NCBI RefSeq assembly: GCF_006345805.1 | Contig: NC_043012.1 | Coordinates: 7,192,001-7,256,000, forward strand | Reading direction: 5' to 3' | DNA: 64,000 nucleotides | From: Octopus sinensis | Lineage: Eukaryota | Shown here: piece after piece, positions 40,170-64,000 of the stretch | Numbering within the stretch: the first letter of the stretch is position 1 | Layout: every line of letters starts with the position of its first letter | Program-made: the position numbers and the translations under genes | Notes under the pieces: model-generated | Told to the model about the DNA's origin: nothing | What the model saw: only the letters and a program-made list of their open reading frames with translations | Database searches by the model: none

Positions 40170-43100
40170 ATGGCTATTCACATTGGTTGTTTAAATGTTC
40201 ATGGCCTGTTGTCAAGCTGGAAGCAAGGACGCTTTCTGAATGACATCAGGTCGAGAAATTTGGATGTAATTGTTGCAACGGAAACCCGGGTGAAGGGGCC
40301 AAGAGATCTGCTCCCCCTCCTGAACGGCTACGAGAAATACGTTTCTCCGAGTCGGGCGGGGGGAGGTGGGGGTGGGGTTTGGTCCTACTAAAACGAAACC
40401 GGGTAGCCGAGAAAAAGTTGGTTTTTTGTGACCCAGAAGGCAGGCTGGTCGTTCTCGACTTGACATTCAGTTGTGGCAAGACAATCAGGCTGGTCGCTAT
40501 TTATGCACCAAACATTATTGGCCCGCAAACCGAATATTTTCGTGGCCTAGGAAAGTTCCTAGCCACGTCGCATTCACTAGTAGTGTTAGGAGACTCTAAT
40601 ACAATATGTGCAGCACACACAGATTGTGTTGGCTCAAACTCGAACATGAACAGAAAATGTAACACAGGCTTTCGGGATCTGCTAAGTCAATTTCAGCTAG
40701 CAGATCCATATAGGTTGGAGCACCCGAACACTCCACAGTGGACGTGGTCAAATAGTGACGGGTCTACCAGAACATATCTAGATAGGATTTTAATTAGAGA
40801 AAAAGATAAGTCCATAGTTGAGTGTCCACAGTTTTTTCTAGTCAGCTACAGTGACCACAAGATGGTTACCTGTAAACTGACGGTAGATAAGTTGCATAGA
40901 CAGGGATCTGGCTACTGGAAACTCAATACGTCCCTTTTGGCGATTGAGGAGTACAGAAAGCGGATCAAGATGTTAATACAGAGGGCATTAACAGGTACCA
41001 TCATTAATAACAAATGGTGGTACGCCCTAAAAAGAGCCATCAAATATGAGTCTATTAGGTTTAGCATAAGTTTAGCTAAGAAGGGACGTAAAATAGGAGA
41101 TGGTCTAGTTAAGGAACTAGAAGAAGCCTGGAGGACTGGTAATACAGACCAAGCGAGGGTGAAAAGACTGGAGTTAAACCAGCATCTTGAAGCCCACCAC
41201 ATGGGAAGTATTACCAGAGCTAAGTTACGTGCAATGGGAGTGAAGGAATCAAAGCCGCTGGATGGGCCCGAGTGGTGGAAGCTCGGCAAGGAAATAGTTC
41301 CTCTATTCGGTCTTTGACGAATCAAAATGGTGTCTTGATAAACGAACCCGAGAAAATGTGTGAGGTCTTTCGGGAGTACTTCGCCCAGCTGTTCGGGGGT
41401 GACGGCGGTCCTGGTGGTGGGAGAGCCCTCGAGGACTTTGTTACCGGGCTGCCGTGCCTCTCGGGGTCGGATGCGGAGTCTTGCGAAGGGCCAATCACAC
41501 TTGAGGAGGTGATGGAGGCTTTGGCCGATTGTAAAGCGGGTAAGTCACCGGGACTTGATGGTCTTCCGTACGAGCTGTATAAATGTATGCCAGACTTGTT
41601 CGGGCAACTACTGACTGACGTGTACGCGAACTGGAAACAGAATGGGTTATCCCCAGATCTGTGCGCCGGGGAGTAGTGACGTTAGTCAGAAAGGACCCGG
41701 ACAAGGGGGACGTTCTAGAGAATTTCAGGCCATCACTCTGTTAAACGCAGAAGTGAAGATTTTGGCCAAGGTTCTAGCAAAAAGGTTGGCGCGTGTCGCG
41801 AATGGTATAGTCGGGGAGGCACAGACATGTTCCATCCCAGGCAGAACCATTCAGGATACCCTCCATCTTATTCGCTATACCATAGAGAGGTTTGGTAATA
41901 AATCTGGCAAAGGTGGGGCATTGGTGCATTGGACCAGTCTAAAGCTTTTGATAGGGTTGACCATCGATACCTAGCGACTGTACTTGCGCGGTTTGGCCTG
42001 GGCCTTGGCTTCCTCGGGTGGTTTATCGCTTTGTACCACAACATTGACTCGATAGTTCGGGTGAACGGTTTCCTTTCGAAGCCGTTCTGCATCAGACGCT
42101 CGGTTCGTCAAGGATGTCCGCTTTCACCACTTTTGTATGTGATGGCTCTCGAGCCATTACTGCAAAGGTTGAGTGGCATCCCGAGAGAACCAGGACTAGA
42201 GGAGTTTGTTACGGCTTTCGCGGATGATATCACTATCAGTGTAACCACAGTGGTACGCCTACGTGAAGTAGGTAAGACTATTGAGGCTTACGAGGAGGTA
42301 GCAGGAGCAAAGATTAACCGGGAAAAGTCGGTCGGCTTGCAGCTCGGCACCTGGGTTGGCAAGTCGATGCCTTCAGACAGTGTTGTTAGGCGCTGGACGG
42401 AGGGACCGGTTAAGTTGCTGGGAGTCTGGTTTGGACCAGGCCTCCAGATAGAGAAGAACTGGACGGAGGTATTGAGCAGGGTGGCTGCAGTAGTCAAGAC
42501 TTGGTCTTGGCGGTGGCTATCCCTGAAAGGGAGGGCGGAAGTGGCCAATGTGTTTATCGCATCGGTCATTACCTACCGCCTGACTGTCGTGCCCTGTCCG
42601 GATTCGTGGTTGATCAGGTTGGAGAGACAGCTCTTTCGCTTTTTGTGGAAGGGCAGGTCGCCACTTGTGAAACGCTCTGTCTGCTGTCAAAAGCCTTTAA
42701 ATGGAGGTTTAGGGATGCCTTGGTTAATGATGCGCAGATATGCGTTGAGGTTGAGGCACCTCTGGATTCTCCTGGATAGTGAACGGGTGTGGTCTCCGCT
42801 GGCCAGACAAATGTTCCCTGAGTTCAAGAGTTTTTGCGAACAGGAAGCCTGGTGTTCTCGTAGACCGAGGTCGAGTGAGTGGCATAAAGAGTGCCGTAAG
42901 GCCCTCTTGCTGTTCCGGCGCTCGGGCAACGCCAGCGGTGGGGGTTCCACACGGATTTTATATAGTGGGTTGGTAGAGTCTGAATGCGACGATGGCCTGG
43001 GGTCGACTCTAGGTCTCGGATTTATTCAACTGGACAGCTTGTTTCATCGTACATTCGGGTTGAGAACGTTGGACAACTTCCAAAAGTCCTAACCTGGCAA

Positions 43101-43566
43101 TGCTACAGAGGTGCCTTGCCTGTTTGGGATAAGCTCGCAAGACATGGTAAACGTCAGTCGCCGACCTGTCCAAGATGCGGTGGGGACAGGGAAACCGTCC
43201 CTCACGCTATTGTTCAGTGTCCGGAGATAACTGAAATGTGGGCTTATGCTGAACATCTGTTGTCCGGCGAAGGAAGAGTACGGCTGTCGACTGAGTCAAT
43301 TATAAAAATTGACCCACCGGGAGTTCTAACGAACGAAGGTAAGAATTGTTTTCTCACGGTTGTAGCAATAGCAAAAGAGGCTGTATGGAATACTAGGATA
43401 AAAGGAATTAAGACAGGCAACTTTATCTCTGGTGACAATTTACGATCCTTTTTTTTTTCATTTGAAAAGGAAACTGTGGCTGGAGAAGAGGTGTCTGTCA
43501 GAGTGTACGTTCCAAAAGAGATGGAAGTATGTTACACGAGTGTTGTGCGTGCAAGGAACCGTGTGA
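40170..43566 (+). pseudogene. Tx1 ORF2: APE endonuclease, reverse transcriptase, zf-RVT; ~7 single-base frameshifts
   Basis: LNVHG, TET, VLGDSN, LDRIL, SDH (APE); KSPGLDGLP, DQSKAFDRVDH, QGCPLSPLLY, FADD (RT); CPRCGGDRETVPHAIVQC. Confidence 0.93.
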
Positions 43567-43814
43567 ATAGACGAGGAAAAAAAAAAAAAAGGAAAAATAA
43601 AAAGGTATCAGCGGTAGATCGGGGCTTGTGGGATCGGAGCGTAACTTGATCATCGCTTCATTTGTATTGTTTTTGTACTGTGTATTCCATTCGATTTTTA
43701 TGTATTGTATTTTATTTTTGATGTCACATTTATGTAAAATCATATCGATTCACTGATCCCATCAGTTGTACTGTCCATATCTATGTTTGGCCCCCGGTGG
43801 GCAATAAAGAAATT

Positions 43815-45236: not shown

Positions 45237-45544
45237 ATATCAACAGTTATCGCCAAGCTAACATGGCAGTCCAGATAAATAGGACGAATGCTACCGTTGA
45301 TTAGCCCTAAGAGGCCATCGCCTCTAGCTAGCTAGCTATGTTACACACAATCCTGTGTTCCTTATAACCTTCGAACTGGAGAGGTCAGCAGCTTCCCCTT
45401 GCTGGTCTGGCACCCACAGACTAGTTTCCAGGTGTTTGCCTCTTATCAATGTGGAGTAGCCGAATTCAGCAGGCATCGCTGTTACGGCAGCATTCGTCCT
45501 ATTTATCTGGACTGCCATGTTAGCTTGGCGATCACTATTAATAT
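45237..45544. mobile_element. MITE with ~60-bp TIRs
   Basis: 45249-45297 is the reverse complement of 45484-45532 (48/49); looser match extends to ATAT flanks. Confidence 0.85.
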
Positions 45545-50656: not shown

Positions 50657-50964
50657 ATAAAAATGTTATTGTAAGAGTCTGGGCATCGAGGGTCACGAAT
50701 CGTCAATCTTTTCGCAGAAAATACAAGGGATAAATTTCCAGTAGATATAAAATATTTTCAAAGCAATTCAGATAACCTGCACAACACAGTGCATGAGAAT
50801 CTTCCATCACGTTAGGAGATGTGGATGAGGAGAGCACCCCCACCTCACTGGGTGCTCAGCTCAGCTTCTTTTTGAAGTCTAAGAGGATTACCAGGCTTAA
50901 GTAAGAAGTTAAATGCATTGATAGGTGAGCTTTTAGTTATGCAAATAATAGCCTATGAGAATAT

Positions 50965-52020
50965 TCCATTTTGACGTAGGCTGTTTTTTGTTGCCCAACA
51001 TATTTCTTTACTACCCACAAGGGGCTAAACATAGACGGGACAAACAAGGACAGACATATATATTAAGTCGATTATATCGACCCCAGTGCGTAACTGGTAC
51101 TTAATTTATTGACCCCGAAAGGATGAAAGGCAAAGTCGACCTCGGCGGAATTTGAACTCAGAACGTAACGGCAGACGAAATACAGCTACGCATTTCGCCC
51201 GGCGAGCTAACGATTCTGCCAGCGCGCCGCCTTTGTTGCCCAATATATTGCCGTTTACATCCCGAGCATGTAATTAAATCAAGTTCTCCGATGCGCATGT
51301 AAAATTAGTTTTTATGGTGAAATTATGTTCTTGTTCTAATCGCTGTCCTGATCCCTCTGTTATATTGATACAAATCCCACAGTTGGCTCTCCTACATTTT
51401 TTTACTGTCGGCTTAGCGGTTATTGTTGGGAGTAATTAGGCCTGGGTTAAAATCTTTTTCATTGATTTTGGTTGTCTCTTACTTTTGATGATTGGGTGTG
51501 TTTTGAGGATTTGATTCATCTTTGGGTCTCTCTTGGGTGGAGCTATGCTGTGGAGAATAGTGTCGAAGGCATCATTGTTATGTTGATTGTGTGTGGAAAT
51601 GTAAGGCAGGGTTTTCAATTTTTCTTCCTTCTTTGGTCTTGATTGCCTAACTTCTTGTGTATTTAATTTAAGTACTCGCTGGATCGTATTGTCGATTAAG
51701 AGCTGCGGGTAATTCCTATTGATGAGTGTGGTTTTCAATTCCTGGAGTCGTGTGTAACGGGTGTTTGCGTTTGATATTATTGTGCATATTCTTTTGGCTA
51801 AACAAAATGGGACATTCATTCTGGTGTGTCTCGGGTGGCAATAATCAAATGGCAAGTACTGCTTCGAGTCTGTGGGTTTGTAATAGATATCTGTCTCTAT
51901 TTGGTCTCCAACTTTCTTAATAAGGATATCTAAAAACGGTAGTTGTTCCTGACTGTACTCTATCGTAAATTGGAGGTTTTCATTTATTCCATTTAGAAGT
52001 GTTCGGAATTCGTTAAGTTT
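50965..52020 (-). mobile_element. Penelope-like element fragment (RT C-terminus, linker, start of GIY-YIG)
   Basis: LQFTIE..QLPFLDILI..TDIYYKPTDSKQYL..CHPRH..VPF.LAKRICTI; C..NCGIC..NFTCASENLI..CSGCKRQYIGQ. Confidence 0.9.
51002..51232 (-). mobile_element. B2 SINE inserted in the GIY-YIG YIGQ codons
   Basis: TSD TTGTTGCCCAA(C/T)AT at 50988-51001 and 51233-51246. Confidence 0.92.
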
Positions 52021-52033
52021 ATGTGTATGTGCG

Positions 52034-59910: not shown

Positions 59911-60814
59911 CAATAATAATTCTCTAAATGAGATATAGACAGTGACTTCTCCATAACATAAGGGACATTAGCCAACTGAATATGGCTAGGGACAGGGCAG
60001 GGTGGTGGGGGTGTCACTGTTGCATTTAGCCCCAGGCGAACATCAACGTCACCAGATAGGCCGACGCCATCACGGCGTCCTCTATCTTGCAAAGGGAGAT
60101 CATTCCCCAAGAAGCGGATGCCACACACGGACCTAGGTTTCAAGGTGTATTGCCTATTATCAACGTATGGTAGGCACCGCTTCTCGACGAACAACTTACC
60201 GTGCAAGATATATATAAAGATTTTCAAGTAAATACATTTACTGATTTCGAAAATCTGTTCGACAGCAATAATAATTCTCTAAATGAGATATAGACAGTGA
60301 CTGCTCCATAACATAAGGGACTAAAGCCAACTGAATATGGCTAGGGACATGGCAGGGTGGTGGGGGTGTCACTGTTGCATTTAGCCCCAGGCGAACATCA
60401 ACGTCACCAGATAGGCCGACGCCATCACGGCGTCCTCTATCTTGCAAAGGGAGATCATTCCCCAAGAAGCGGATGCCATCTCATTTAGAGAATTATTATT
60501 GCTGTCGAACAGATTTTCGAAATCAGTAAATGTATTTACTTGAAAATCTTTATATATATCTTGCACGGTGAGTTGTTCGTCGAGAAGCGGTGCCTACCAT
60601 ACGTTGATAATAGGCAATACACCTTGAAACCTAGGTCCGTGTGTGGCATCCGCTTCTTGGGGAATGATCTCCCTTTGCAAGATAGAGGACGCCGTGATGG
60701 CGTCGGCCTATCTGGTGACGTTGATGTTCGCCTGGGGCTAAATGCAACAGTGACACCCCCACCACCCTGCCCTGTCCCTAGCCATATTCAGTTGGCTAAT
60801 GTCCCTTATGTTAT
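59909..60814. repeat. 355-bp unit in partial tandem plus an inverted copy, between (TA)n tracts
   Basis: unit 1 59909-60263; partial unit 2 60264-60478; 60478-60814 is the reverse complement of 59953-60289. Confidence 0.9.
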
Positions 60815-62274: not shown

Positions 62275-62885
62275 CAGGTGTGGCTGTGTGTTAAGCGGTT
62301 TTGCTTCACAACTGCATGGTTCCAGGTTCAATCCCACAGTGTGGTACCTTGGGCAAGTGTCTTCTACTATAGTCTCAGGCTGACCAAAGCTTTCTGAGTG
62401 GATTTCTGAAAGAAGCCCGGAAACTGAAAGAAGCCCGTCGTATATATATAAATATGTGTGTGTATGTATATGTGTGTATATGTGAGAGAGAAAGAGTCTT
62501 TGCGTTTGTTTACCTCACCAAAGCATGACAACCGGTGTTGGTGTGTTTACGCCCCGTAACTTAGTGGTTCAACAAAAGGCTCCGAAAGAAGATGCCAGGC
62601 TTTAGAAAATAAATACTGGGGTCGATTCGTTCGGCTAAAATTCTTTAAAATGGCACTCCAGCATAGCCGCGGTCTAACGACCGAAACGAGTGAGCGATAA
62701 AAGATACAAGAGATACGATTTCACGATTTCCTGGTGGTAAGTAGCTTGCTTACCAACCACATGGTTCCGAGTTCAGTCCCGCTGCGTGGCACCTTGGGCA
62801 AGTGTCTTCTACAATAGCCTCAAGCCGACCAAAGCCTTGTGATTGGATTTCGTAGATGGAAACTGAAAGAAGTCCATCGTATATA
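62275..62885 (+). mobile_element. family-A SINE copies (62275-62700, 62735-62885)
   Basis: A motifs. Confidence 0.8.
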
Positions 62886-62899
62886 TGTATATATATATA

Positions 62900-62945
<46 letters not shown>

Positions 62946-63206
62946 TATTTTAGCAATTAAGGACAACTACTTAATAAGGAAAACTTAACAAGAAATTGTC
63001 AGGTAGATAGCGTAAAAACCTCATAAGAGAAAAAATTTCGAAAATAATTATTTCTTATTGAACATATTATTTATATATAGAGGGCATTATACATACATGC
63101 CAGGAGGCATTCTACAACACGCCATACGCTAAAGGGACAATCAGTCATTTCTACCAAAAATATTACTAATCCCACCGAATGCAATTTCAAAAGAAAGACA
63201 TTTAAA

Positions 63207-63270
63207 AATATATAGACCTGTATCACAGTGATTTCATACTTACGTAATCATCAGCAGGCCTGAATATACT
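63207..63270 (-). ncRNA. candidate type I hammerhead ribozyme
   Basis: minus strand: AGUAUAU-UC-AGGCCUG CUGAUGA UUAC-GUAA-GUAU GAAA UCAC-U-GUGA UA CAGGUCU-AUAUAUU. Confidence 0.75.
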
Positions 63271-63693
63271 AAAATAAACAAACGACCCTGCTTCGCTTAA
63301 GCCGATCAGCTAACTGATCAACATCAACGAAGCACATGGGTGGGTTTATATATACTATATCCGGATGAATGGCAAACTTTTACGAATTGCATTTCGGGAG
63401 AGGAAAAGTTTTTTCGGAATAAAAATTTAGCAATTAAGGACAACTACTTAATAAGGAAAACTTAACAAGAAATTGTCAGGTAGATAGCGTAAAAACCTCA
63501 TAAGAGAAAAAATTTCGAAAATAATTATTTCTTATTGAACATATTAATTTATATATAGAGGGCATTATACATACATGCCAGGAGGCATTCTACATACACG
63601 CCATCGCTAAGAGGACAATCAGTCATTTCTACCAAAAATATTACTAATCCCACCGAATGCAATTTTTCAAAGAAAGACATTTAAAAATATATA

Positions 63694-63736
63694 GACCTGT
63701 ATCACAGTGATTCATACTACGTAATCATCAGCAGGC
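63694..63736 (-). ncRNA. second hammerhead copy with three 1-nt deletions (possible sequencing errors)
   Basis: same motif; GAAA reduced to GAA, loop II and stem I each lose 1 nt. Confidence 0.5.
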
Positions 63737-64000
63737 TGAATATACTATAAATAAACAAACGACCTGCTTCGCTTAAGCCGATCAGCTAACTGATCAACAT
63801 CAACGAAGCACATGGGTGGGTTTATATATACTATATCCGGATGAATGGCAAACTTTTACGAATTGCATTTCGGGAGAGGAAAAGTTTTTTCGGAATAAAA
63901 ATTTAGCAATTAAGGACAACTACTTAATAAGGAAAACTTAACAAGAAATTGTCAGGTAGATAGCGTAAAAACCTCATAAGAGAAAAAATTTCGAAAATAA

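What the first reader, a model, noticed from the sequence alone, without database searches (positions are those of the whole stretch)
63207..63270. Hammerhead ribozyme fold on the minus strand of the terminal tandem repeat
Seen in sequence: every element is in the correct order. Stem I has 7 bp, a UC bulge and 7 more bp; then the CUGAUGA core; stem II UAC/GUA capped by a GNRA loop (GUAA); GAAA; a palindromic stem III UCAC-U-GUGA; and an AUA cleavage triplet (predicted cut between plus-strand 63220 and 63221). Known: type I hammerheads with very short or palindromic stem III occur in Penelope-like elements and retrozymes and can cleave as dimers, and a stem I bulge contacting loop II is the usual tertiary interaction. 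Atypical here: 10.1/11.1 is U.U rather than the usual G-C. Activity is inference.
Basis: partly seen in the sequence, partly recalled or inferred. Interest (0 to 1): 0.9.

Follow-up and report, generated by a model that had tools for sequence, protein, structure and literature searches.

The report
Hammerhead ribozyme in octopod tandem repeat
One unit of a 477-bp tandem repeat at the end of this (probably octopus-type) genome window encodes a complete type I hammerhead self-cleaving RNA motif, which makes the repeat look like a "retrozyme", a known class of small ribozyme-bearing mobile elements of animals, so it is a real but ordinary find.

Summary
The minus strand of 63207-63270 carries every hammerhead element in type I order, with the predicted cut between 63221 and 63220. 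My descriptor found this as its only hit in the window. About 0.005-0.009 such hits per window are expected by chance, and about 1e-4 at the observed stem lengths. The motif lies in the only long-period tandem repeat of the window: 476-477 bp, at least 2.2 units, 33% GC, no coding capacity, next to a (TA)n tract. The 479-nt unit RNA of ribozyme polarity is unusually well folded (z about -6).

The "atypical" U.U at 10.1/11.1, the 3-bp helix II, A17 and the palindromic helix III are all shared with the axolotl HHR_Amex2 retrozyme ribozyme. That ribozyme self-cleaves, and cleaves better as a dimer.

Caveats:
- No Rfam hammerhead model matches.
- The neighbouring unit has three 1-nt deletions in the motif (GAAA to GAA), so only one complete ribozyme is visible.
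- No other copies could be retrieved, so there is no covariation evidence.
- Activity is untested.

Verdict: a probable non-LTR retrozyme, or hammerhead satellite, of a cephalopod. It is a new member of a known kind, of modest interest.

The parts
62949..64000 (-). Head-to-tail tandem array. Period 476-477 bp, at least 2.2 units: 62949-63425, 63426-63901 and 63902-64000. It runs off the end of the window. It is 33% GC with no ORF longer than 51 aa.
   Evidence: TRF, alignment, blastn of the unit against the window, ORF list, GC.
63207..63270 (-). Complete type I hammerhead motif of unit 1. It comprises helix I (7 bp, UC bulge, 7 bp), CUGAUGA, helix II (U.U + 3 bp + GUAA), GAAA, helix III (AUCA-CUG-UGAU) and A17.
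   Evidence: Sequence reading, descriptor scan, RNAfold, whose MFE keeps helices I and II.
63220..63221 (-). Predicted self-cleavage site: 3' of A17 (63221) and 5' of C1.1 (63220).
   Evidence: Position of H17 derived from the core register. Cleavage itself is inferred, not shown.
63222..63232 (-). Near-palindromic helix III segment AUCACUGUGAU, which can pair with the same segment of a neighbouring unit (double hammerhead).
   Evidence: Duplex -12.1 kcal/mol against -1.6 for the hairpin. Cofold of two motifs gives -34.5 against 2 x -13.4. The MFE of the natural 544-nt two-unit transcript pairs the two segments.
63686..63746 (-). Hammerhead motif of unit 2, defective as written. It has 1-nt deletions in helix I (GG to G), loop II (GUAA to GUA) and the core (GAAA to GAA). 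Its substrate strand and cleavage-site context (A17 at 63700) are intact.
   Evidence: Alignment of units. It fails both descriptors.
63221..63699 (-). Predicted 479-nt monomer RNA released by cleavage at the two sites. It is highly self-paired, and its ends are brought together by helix I.
   Evidence: MFE -127.5 kcal/mol with z -5.96, against z -3.74 for the opposite strand. The circular fold gives -120.8 kcal/mol, 66% paired, z about -5.2.
62880..62948 (.). (TA)n microsatellite that directly abuts the 3' end (ribozyme polarity) of the array. It is a possible insertion target.
   Evidence: TRF. (TA)n covers 3.8% of the window. Penelope-like elements prefer (TA)n targets (PMC8557442). The link to this array is inference.

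Best explanation
The array at 62949-64000+ is a non-LTR retrozyme, equivalently a hammerhead-bearing satellite derived from Penelope-like elements, in a cephalopod genome that is probably an octopod.

Inferred life cycle, by analogy with characterised retrozymes:
1. The minus strand is transcribed as a multimer.
2. The type I hammerhead in each unit cuts 3' of A17 (63221|63220). It does so poorly on its own, because helix III is weak. It cuts better when the near-palindromic helix III segments of two neighbouring units pair into a double hammerhead.
3. This releases a monomer of about 479 nt with 5'-OH and 2',3'-cyclic phosphate ends held together by helix I.
4. A host tRNA ligase can circularise the monomer.
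5. The reverse transcriptase/endonuclease of a Penelope-like element can copy it back into the genome.

Shown here: the motif, its improbability by chance, the repeat architecture, the RNA foldability and the presence of PLE remnants. Inferred: transcription, cleavage, circularisation and mobilisation.

At this locus only unit 1 has an intact catalytic part. Unit 2 keeps an intact substrate strand but has a broken core. The locus may therefore be a partly decayed copy, or unit 2 may carry assembly errors.
For: - The core and type I topology are complete at 63207-63270.
- It is the only descriptor hit in 128 kb of searched strand. Chance expectation is 0.005-0.009 per window for the relaxed descriptor and about 1e-4 at the observed stem lengths.
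- The motif lies in the only long-period tandem repeat of the window.
- The unit is 476-477 bp, 33% GC and non-coding. This is close to the published definition: 150-450 bp tandem repeats, GC <45-50%, type I hammerhead (PMC7229834).
- Strand-specific structure: the ribozyme-polarity monomer has z -5.96, the other strand z -3.74.
- The double-hammerhead helix III is strongly favoured, as in newt and axolotl repeats (PMC7229834, PMC4209133).
- The architecture matches the experimentally active axolotl Ax353/HHR_Amex2: U.U at the base of helix II, 3-bp helix II, A17 and a palindromic helix III.
- A remnant of a Penelope-like element lies 11 kb away. It has an RT C-terminus, HTH_animal and a GIY-YIG motif, and its homologues carry PF00078/PF26215/PF01541. 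Retrozymes and PLEs co-occur (bioRxiv 10.64898/2026.07.22.740005).
- The array abuts (TA)n, a preferred PLE target.
Against: - No Rfam hammerhead family matches, at the gathering score or even at E<=10 on a 101-nt slice.
- A covariance model built here from four validated retrozyme hammerheads gives only 13.5 bits (E about 0.1) and ranks an unrelated site higher.
- The second unit lacks one A of GAAA and two further bases. The published criterion 'two consecutive units with complete hammerheads' is therefore not met as the sequence stands.
- Four of the 10 indel events between the units fall in the 64-nt motif. That is the opposite of conservation.
- Only 2.2 units are visible, and no further copy was found anywhere. 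There is therefore no covariation evidence.
- Helix II has only three Watson-Crick pairs.
- The 64-nt motif alone is not unusually stable (z -0.94).
- The unit length is slightly above the published 150-450 bp range.
- There are no expression or cleavage data.
Confidence: 0.7

Rival explanations
1. Relic only. The repeat descends from a hammerhead-bearing element, but this locus is dead. The ribozyme of unit 1 is too weak to cut (U.U at 10.1/11.1, 3-bp helix II, marginal helix III), unit 2 is broken, and nothing is transcribed or processed.
For: Unit 2 has GAA instead of GAAA plus two more deletions. The differences between units cluster in the motif, 4 of 10 indel events in 13% of the unit. 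Individual genomic copies of retroelements are usually under no selection. Rfam models do not recognise the motif.
Against: Unit 1 is complete and has the same deviations as a ribozyme that does cleave, the axolotl HHR_Amex2 (22% in 1 h as a monomer, more as a dimer; PMC7229834). The units are 97% identical, so the array is young. Ten indel events against a single CT/TC swap is an odd mutational spectrum and may reflect assembly error rather than decay.
Confidence: 0.18
2. Terminal repeat of an autonomous Penelope-like element. The 477-bp units are pseudo-LTR copies, and an RT/GIY-YIG reading frame lies just beyond the end of the window. On this reading the ribozyme belongs to a PLE rather than to a non-autonomous retrozyme.
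For: PLE pseudo-LTRs carry hammerheads and form partial tandems, and PLEs insert at (TA)n. The window holds a PLE remnant. The array runs off the window, so what follows is unknown.
Against: PLE tandems repeat the whole element or its truncated 3' part, not a 477-bp unit two or more times. PLE hammerheads of animals are 'minimal', with almost no helix III, a long helix II and a short helix I (PMC4209133). This one has the canonical architecture found in retrozymes. The unit shares no sequence with the PLE remnant or anything else in the window.
Confidence: 0.07
3. Chance resemblance. An AT-rich satellite happens to contain CUGAUGA and GAAA with complementary flanks. There is no ribozyme ancestry or function.
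For: A genome of gigabase size offers tens of thousands of windows. The relaxed descriptor is expected about 0.005-0.009 times per window. Curated covariance models do not score it. The neighbouring unit does not keep the core.
Against: At the observed stem lengths the expectation is about 1e-4 per window, before counting the 7-bp distal helix I. It is about 1e-6 if the hit must also fall in a long-period tandem repeat. The whole unit is strongly and strand-specifically structured. The deviations from consensus are those of a validated ribozyme.
Confidence: 0.05

Closest known systems
Axolotl retrozyme Rtz_353 with hammerhead HHR_Amex2 (Cervera and de la Pena 2020, PMC7229834)
   Same: Both are tandem non-coding repeats of a few hundred bp with a type I hammerhead. 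Both have CUGAUGA, a U.U mismatch at 10.1/11.1 and a 3-bp helix II. Both have a palindromic helix III containing CAC...GUG, and an A17 cleavage nucleotide. The axolotl ribozyme is weak as a monomer and efficient as a dimer, which is also the energetics predicted here.
   Different: The host phyla differ (vertebrate against mollusc). The unit is 353 bp there against 477 bp here. Loop II is CACUA there and a GUAA tetraloop here. Helix I is 7 bp before a 2-nt bulge here. There is no sequence homology outside the core. The axolotl RNA is shown to cleave and circularise, whereas here nothing is tested.
Mussel (Mytilus galloprovincialis) and coral (Acropora millepora) non-LTR retrozymes (PMC7229834)
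   Same: All are invertebrate, low-GC, tandem, non-coding units with one type I hammerhead per unit. The monomer RNAs are predicted to be highly self-paired. The mussel ribozymes likewise lack most of the archetypal loop 1-loop 2 nucleotides.
   Different: Those ribozymes have a G-C pair at 10.1/11.1, a 4-bp helix II and C17, and pass a strict descriptor. Their units are 220-350 bp. Thousands of copies and circular RNAs are documented.
Double hammerheads of newt satellite 2 (known from the literature cited in PMC6155905 and PMC4209133)
   Same: Helix III is too weak for efficient single-motif cleavage, and two tandem motifs pair their helix III strands to form the active structure.
   Different: Newt motifs have a 1-bp helix III with a palindromic tetraloop. 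Here a 4-bp/triloop hairpin is possible, so some monomeric activity is conceivable.
Minimal hammerheads in pseudo-LTRs of Penelope-like elements (Cervera and de la Pena 2014, PMC4209133)
   Same: Both are type I with a palindromic helix III and are thought to act as dimers. Both sit in animal retroelements that insert at microsatellites. A PLE remnant is present in this window.
   Different: Minimal PLE motifs have almost no helix III, a 7-8-bp helix II and a 4-5-bp helix I, and they flank an RT-endonuclease ORF. The motif here has canonical proportions and lies in a short tandem unit with no ORF.

Membership tests
Hammerhead ribozyme, type I | Conserved core: C3 U4 G5 A6 N7 G8 A9, G12 A13 A14, A15.1-U16.1 pair, and H17 that is not G | tested here: met
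   CUGAUGA at 63254-63248, GAA at 63235-63233, A15.1 at 63232 paired with U16.1 at 63222, and A17 at 63221.
Hammerhead ribozyme, type I | Three helices around the core, with helix I open and helices II and III capped | tested here: met
   Helix I is 7 + 7 bp. Helix II is 3 bp plus a GUAA loop. Helix III is 4 bp plus a triloop, or 10 bp between two units. The MFE of the 64-mer keeps helices I and II. Helix III loses to an alternative pairing by 2.1 kcal/mol.
Hammerhead ribozyme, type I | G10.1-C11.1 pair closing helix II (usual but not universal) | tested here: not met
   It is U.U at 63247/63236. The same mismatch occurs in the self-cleaving axolotl HHR_Amex2.
Hammerhead ribozyme, type I | Score at or above the gathering threshold of an Rfam hammerhead covariance model | tested here: not met
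   There is no hammerhead hit at gathering level on the window. There is none at E<=10 on 1.1 kb or on 101 nt. A home-made model from 4 validated motifs gives 13.5 bits and is not discriminating.
Hammerhead ribozyme, type I | Tertiary contact between the helix I internal loop or bulge and loop II | not testable with these tools
   A UC bulge on the 5' strand of helix I after 7 bp, together with a GUAA loop on a 4-layer helix II, gives a plausible geometry. The canonical spacing is 6 bp and 4 bp (PMC4209133). This is inference only.
Hammerhead ribozyme, type I | Conservation of the core and covariation of the helices among copies | tested here: inconclusive
   Only two full units are available. 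Unit 2 has three 1-nt deletions in the motif. No other copy was found in any searchable collection.
Hammerhead ribozyme, type I | Site-specific self-cleavage giving 2',3'-cyclic phosphate and 5'-OH ends | not testable with these tools
   This needs in-vitro transcription or RNA end mapping.
Non-LTR (metazoan) retrozyme | [quoted passage not shown] | tested here: met
   The period is 476-477 bp with at least 2.2 units, slightly above the published range.
Non-LTR (metazoan) retrozyme | Low GC content (<45-50%) and no coding capacity | tested here: met
   GC is 33%. The longest ORF is 51 aa and has no homologue.
Non-LTR (metazoan) retrozyme | A complete type I hammerhead in each unit, or in at least two consecutive units (criterion of bioRxiv 10.64898/2026.07.22.740005) | tested here: not met
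   Unit 1 is complete. Unit 2 fails both the strict and the relaxed descriptor. The motif of unit 3 lies beyond the window.
Non-LTR (metazoan) retrozyme | Monomer RNA predicted to be compact and highly self-paired | tested here: met
   z is -5.96 linear and about -5.2 circular, with 66% of bases paired.
Non-LTR (metazoan) retrozyme | Co-occurrence with Penelope-like elements in the genome | tested here: met
   A PLE remnant lies at about 50900-52017 on the minus strand. Its homologues combine RVT_1, HTH_animal and GIY-YIG.
Non-LTR (metazoan) retrozyme | Expression as linear and circular RNAs of unit length | not testable with these tools
   No transcript data are available here.
Penelope-like element pseudo-LTR hammerhead | The motif lies in a terminal repeat flanking an RT-GIY-YIG reading frame | tested here: inconclusive
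   No such ORF adjoins the array within the window. The sequence beyond 64000 is unknown.
C/D box snoRNA (source of the weak Rfam hits) | A C box RUGAUGA and a D box CUGA brought together by a terminal stem, and an Rfam score above threshold | tested here: not met
   The best score is snoZ7 at 14.3 bits against a threshold of 43. There is no CUGA next to the 3' strand of the stem.

The most novel reading that the evidence does not exclude
This may be the first active retrozyme family described in a cephalopod. On this reading octopod tissues would hold abundant circular RNAs of about 479 nt made by this ribozyme. In mixed arrays, an intact unit would cut the still-intact substrate strand of a defective neighbour through the double-hammerhead pairing, so partly decayed arrays would still release unit-length RNA. 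The library search found no paper listing that pairs retrozymes with cephalopods.
Probability: 0.3. Interest if true: 0.4.

Novelty: new member of a known kind. Interest (0 to 1): 0.3.

Why it matters
[quoted passage not shown] A cephalopod family would extend their known host range within molluscs. It would also add a second natural ribozyme with a U.U pair at 10.1/11.1, which is useful for structure-function work on helix II. Finally, it would give a marker for annotating a repeat class that standard covariance-model scans miss, since Rfam finds nothing here. It does not change the understanding of how hammerheads or retrozymes work.

Tried and rejected
**Rfam scans.** I ran three: the whole window at gathering level, 1.1 kb at E<=10 and 101 nt at E<=10. 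None gave a hammerhead hit. The only hits were weak snoRNA/miRNA noise driven by UGAUGA, and I rejected those.

**Home-made covariance model.** I built it from four experimentally validated retrozyme hammerheads: coral, mussel and two from axolotl. It is too small to discriminate. The candidate scores 13.5 bits, unit 2 scores 14.9 bits, and an unrelated site scores 18.5 bits.

**Searches for more copies.**
- blastn of the unit against the window found nothing beyond the array.
- Exact-pattern scans of metagenome contigs (twice), viral contigs and prokaryotic genome contigs found nothing.
- Exact look-ups of two ORFs of the unit, and a homology search with the 51-aa ORF, found nothing.
- Exact look-up of ten window ORFs, meant to locate the source assembly and read past 64000, found none on record.
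- Two 20-kb loci from Octopus vulgaris and O. sinensis, and two metagenomic PLE contigs, hold no copy of the unit.

**Pfam on the PLE remnant.** Nothing was significant. The homology search settled its identity instead.

**Readings rejected.** I considered and rejected a C/D snoRNA, a microRNA hairpin and a ribozyme on the plus strand. The descriptor finds nothing on the plus strand.

Full report
**What is there.** The last 1052 bases of the window (62949-64000) are a head-to-tail tandem repeat. Its period is 476-477 bp, 2.2 units are visible, the units are 97% identical, and the array runs off the end of the window. It is the only tandem repeat of period 50 bp or more in the 64 kb. The unit matches nothing else in the window. 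It has 33% GC. Its longest ORF is 51 aa, with no homologue among 5.8 billion proteins. On the left the array directly abuts a (TA)n microsatellite at 62880-62948.

**The motif.** The minus strand of 63207-63270 reads AGUAUAU-UC-AGGCCUG / CUGAUGA / U-UAC-GUAA-GUA-U / GAAA / UCA-CUG-UGA-U / A | CAGGUCU-AUAUAUU. Every invariant hammerhead position is present: C3 to A9, G12 A13 A14, the A15.1-U16.1 pair, and H17 = A. The order is type I, with helix I open.

The one correction concerns helix III. It cannot close on a single U. As a hairpin it is 4 bp with a CUG triloop and is worth only -1.6 kcal/mol. Pairing the 11-nt near-palindrome of one unit with that of another gives 10 bp and -12.1 kcal/mol. 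Two motifs cofold at -34.5 kcal/mol, against 2 x -13.4 for separate folding. The minimum-energy fold of the natural 544-nt two-unit transcript uses this intermolecular-type helix III.

**Chance.** I wrote a descriptor with these requirements: CUGANGA; helix II of at least 3 bp; GAAA; helix III of at least 2 bp closed by A-U; H not G; and helix I of at least 5 bp. A relaxed form allows a mismatch at 10.1/11.1.
- The relaxed form finds exactly one hit on both strands of the window, and it is this one. The strict form finds none.
- First-order Markov sequences of the window's composition give 0.005 to 0.009 relaxed hits per window. They give about 1e-4 at the observed stem lengths, based on one event in 300,000 planted cores, so the figure is rough.
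- Requiring the hit to fall in the 1.6% of the window that is long-period tandem repeat lowers this to about 1e-6.
- The "as good as observed" figure is post hoc. Even so, a chance origin is unlikely at genome scale.
- As a calibration, three of the four experimentally validated retrozyme hammerheads pass the same descriptor. Their construct sequences are printed in the supplement of PMC7229834.

**The negative results.**
- No Rfam hammerhead model matches, at the gathering score or at E<=10 on a 101-nt slice.
- A covariance model built here from the four validated motifs is too weak to decide. It gives 13.5 bits for unit 1, 14.9 bits for unit 2 and 18.5 bits for another site.
- The 64-mer on its own is not unusually stable (z -0.94).
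- Most important, the motif of unit 2 (63686-63746) lacks one base each in helix I, loop II and GAAA, and fails both descriptors.
- The two units differ by 10 indel events and one CT/TC swap. Four of the indels lie in the 64-nt motif. By my own binomial arithmetic, not a tool result, the chance of 4 or more out of 10 falling there is about 0.03.
- An indel-only spectrum in short homopolymers is unusual for real divergence. It may reflect consensus errors of a long-read assembly in a tandem repeat, but this cannot be settled here.
- Taken at face value, only one complete ribozyme is visible. The substrate strand of unit 2, including its cleavage-site context (A17 at 63700), is intact. In a double hammerhead, the enzyme strands of unit 1 would face the substrate strand of unit 2. 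This last point is inference.

**Context supporting a retrozyme.**
- The 479-nt RNA that would be released by cutting at both sites (63221-63699, minus strand) folds to -127.5 kcal/mol with z = -5.96. The complementary strand reaches only -95.4 kcal/mol and z = -3.74.
- As a circle the RNA folds to -120.8 kcal/mol with 66% of bases paired. In the linear fold its two ends are held together by helix I.
- This matches the published description of metazoan non-LTR retrozymes: tandem repeats of 150-450 bp, GC below 45-50%, no LTR/PBS/PPT, one type I hammerhead per unit, and expression as compact linear and circular RNAs (PMC7229834; bioRxiv 10.64898/2026.07.22.740005).
That ribozyme self-cleaves 22% in one hour as a monomer and much better as a dimer.
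- Its sequence (CUGAUGA-U-GCC-CACUA-GGC-U-GAAA-CACGUG-U-A) has the same descriptor profile as the candidate: a 3-bp helix II, a mismatch at its base, a palindromic helix III and A17.

**The genome and its Penelope-like elements.**
- A LINE reverse transcriptase in the window has Argonauta hians as its best named relative.
- A second fragment has an Octopus vulgaris protein as its best hit, at 72% identity.
- The SINE next to the array is 88-89% identical to copies in O. vulgaris and O. sinensis loci.
- The window is therefore probably from an octopod.
- The second fragment, at about 50900-52017 on the minus strand, is a remnant of a Penelope-like element. It has the RT C-terminus, an HTH_animal region and a GIY-YIG motif (LITCSGCKRQYIGQ), and it is split by a SINE insertion. 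Its homologues combine PF00078, PF26215 and PF01541.
- Retrozymes are reported to co-occur with PLEs and to derive from them. PLEs prefer (TA)n targets, which fits the array's left boundary. However, (TA)n covers 3.8% of this window, so this is weak evidence.

**Mechanism proposed.** The minus strand is transcribed as a multimer. Cleavage occurs 3' of A17, mainly through double hammerheads between neighbouring units. This releases a 479-nt monomer with 5'-OH and 2',3'-cyclic phosphate ends. A tRNA ligase circularises it, and PLE enzymes reverse-transcribe and insert it. Only the sequence-level anatomy and the energetics are shown here. Every biochemical step is inferred from characterised relatives.

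**Rivals.**
- A dead relic of such an element (0.18).
- A pseudo-LTR of an autonomous PLE whose ORF lies beyond the window (0.07). The short repeated unit and the canonical, not minimal, architecture argue against this.
- Pure chance (0.05).
- A C/D snoRNA reading is rejected.

**Novelty and interest.** Type I hammerheads in tandem repeats of molluscs and other animals are well described. The U.U variant, dimeric action and the PLE link are all published. The library search found no paper listing that pairs retrozymes with cephalopods. This is therefore best called a new member of a known kind. The finding is real and correctly interpreted, but a specialist would not be surprised, so I score interest at 0.3.

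**Limits.** No further copies could be obtained. The accessible DNA collections are viral, metagenomic or prokaryotic, and the source assembly is not on record. The sequence beyond 64000 is unknown, and nothing about activity or expression was tested.

Noticed in passing
window 60163 (-) and 60604 (+), i.e. about 60124-60169 and 60598-60643; and window 45413-45455 (-): This is a second, different hammerhead-like motif, with a UUGAUAA core (U3/A8 in place of C3/G8). One form reads CAUACG-UUGAUAA-U-AGG-CAAUACA-CCU-U-GAAA-CCUAGG-U-C|CGUGUG. The other reads UCCACA-UUGAUAA-G-AGG-CAAACA-CCU-G-GAAA-CUAG-U-C|UGUGGG. The roughly 55-nt motif is the only part that aligns between the two elements. Two helix I pairs differ by changes on both sides (C-G to U-A, U-A to G-C). 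The U3-A8 core covariation is reported for minimal hammerheads of Schistosoma Penelope-like elements (PMC4209133).
   Followed up: partly
window about 50900-52017, minus strand: This is a remnant of a Penelope-like element. It has the RT C-terminus, an HTH_animal region (PF26215 in its homologues) and a GIY-YIG motif. It carries a frameshift, and a SINE insertion is flanked by an apparent target duplication (tattgggcaacaaa / tgttgggcaacaaaa). It is truncated upstream by a microsatellite at 52021 onwards. The best hit is an Octopus vulgaris protein at 72% identity.
   Followed up: partly
window 59953-60289 and 60478-60814: This is a perfect (100%) 337-bp inverted repeat with a 188-nt spacer. 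Each arm carries the UUGAUAA hammerhead-like motif. It may be a head-to-head pair of retroelement ends, as described for PLE insertions, or an assembly foldback artefact.
   Followed up: no
window 62949-63901: The two full units of the array differ by 10 single- or double-base indel events and only one adjacent CT/TC swap. This spectrum suggests consensus errors in the assembly rather than ordinary divergence. The LINE at 40379-43649 is likewise split into five overlapping ORFs by frameshifts.
   Followed up: partly
window 40379-43649, plus strand: This is a non-LTR retrotransposon with an endonuclease/exonuclease/phosphatase domain and a reverse transcriptase, broken into five frames. Its closest named relative is from Argonauta hians at 58% identity.
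   Followed up: partly
window 62480-62880 and many other places: A tRNA-like SINE followed by microsatellite lies immediately left of the (TA)n tract and the array. Copies in Octopus vulgaris and O. sinensis loci are 88-89% identical.
   Followed up: no
L004 1474-1509 (ENA metagenome scaffold encoding a PLE endonuclease, 48% identical to the window's remnant): A minimal hammerhead, UGUGC-CUGAUGA-ACUUUUU-GAAA-CGCG-U-U|GCACA, lies about 100 nt downstream of the HTH_animal/GIY-YIG ORF. This is the position where PLE hammerheads are expected.
   Followed up: no
window 63302-63321 and 63778-63797, minus strand: A 9-bp hairpin, UUGAUCAGUUAGCUGAUCGG, inside a longer stem is identical in both units and appears in all predicted folds of the unit RNA. 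Its function is unknown.
   Followed up: no
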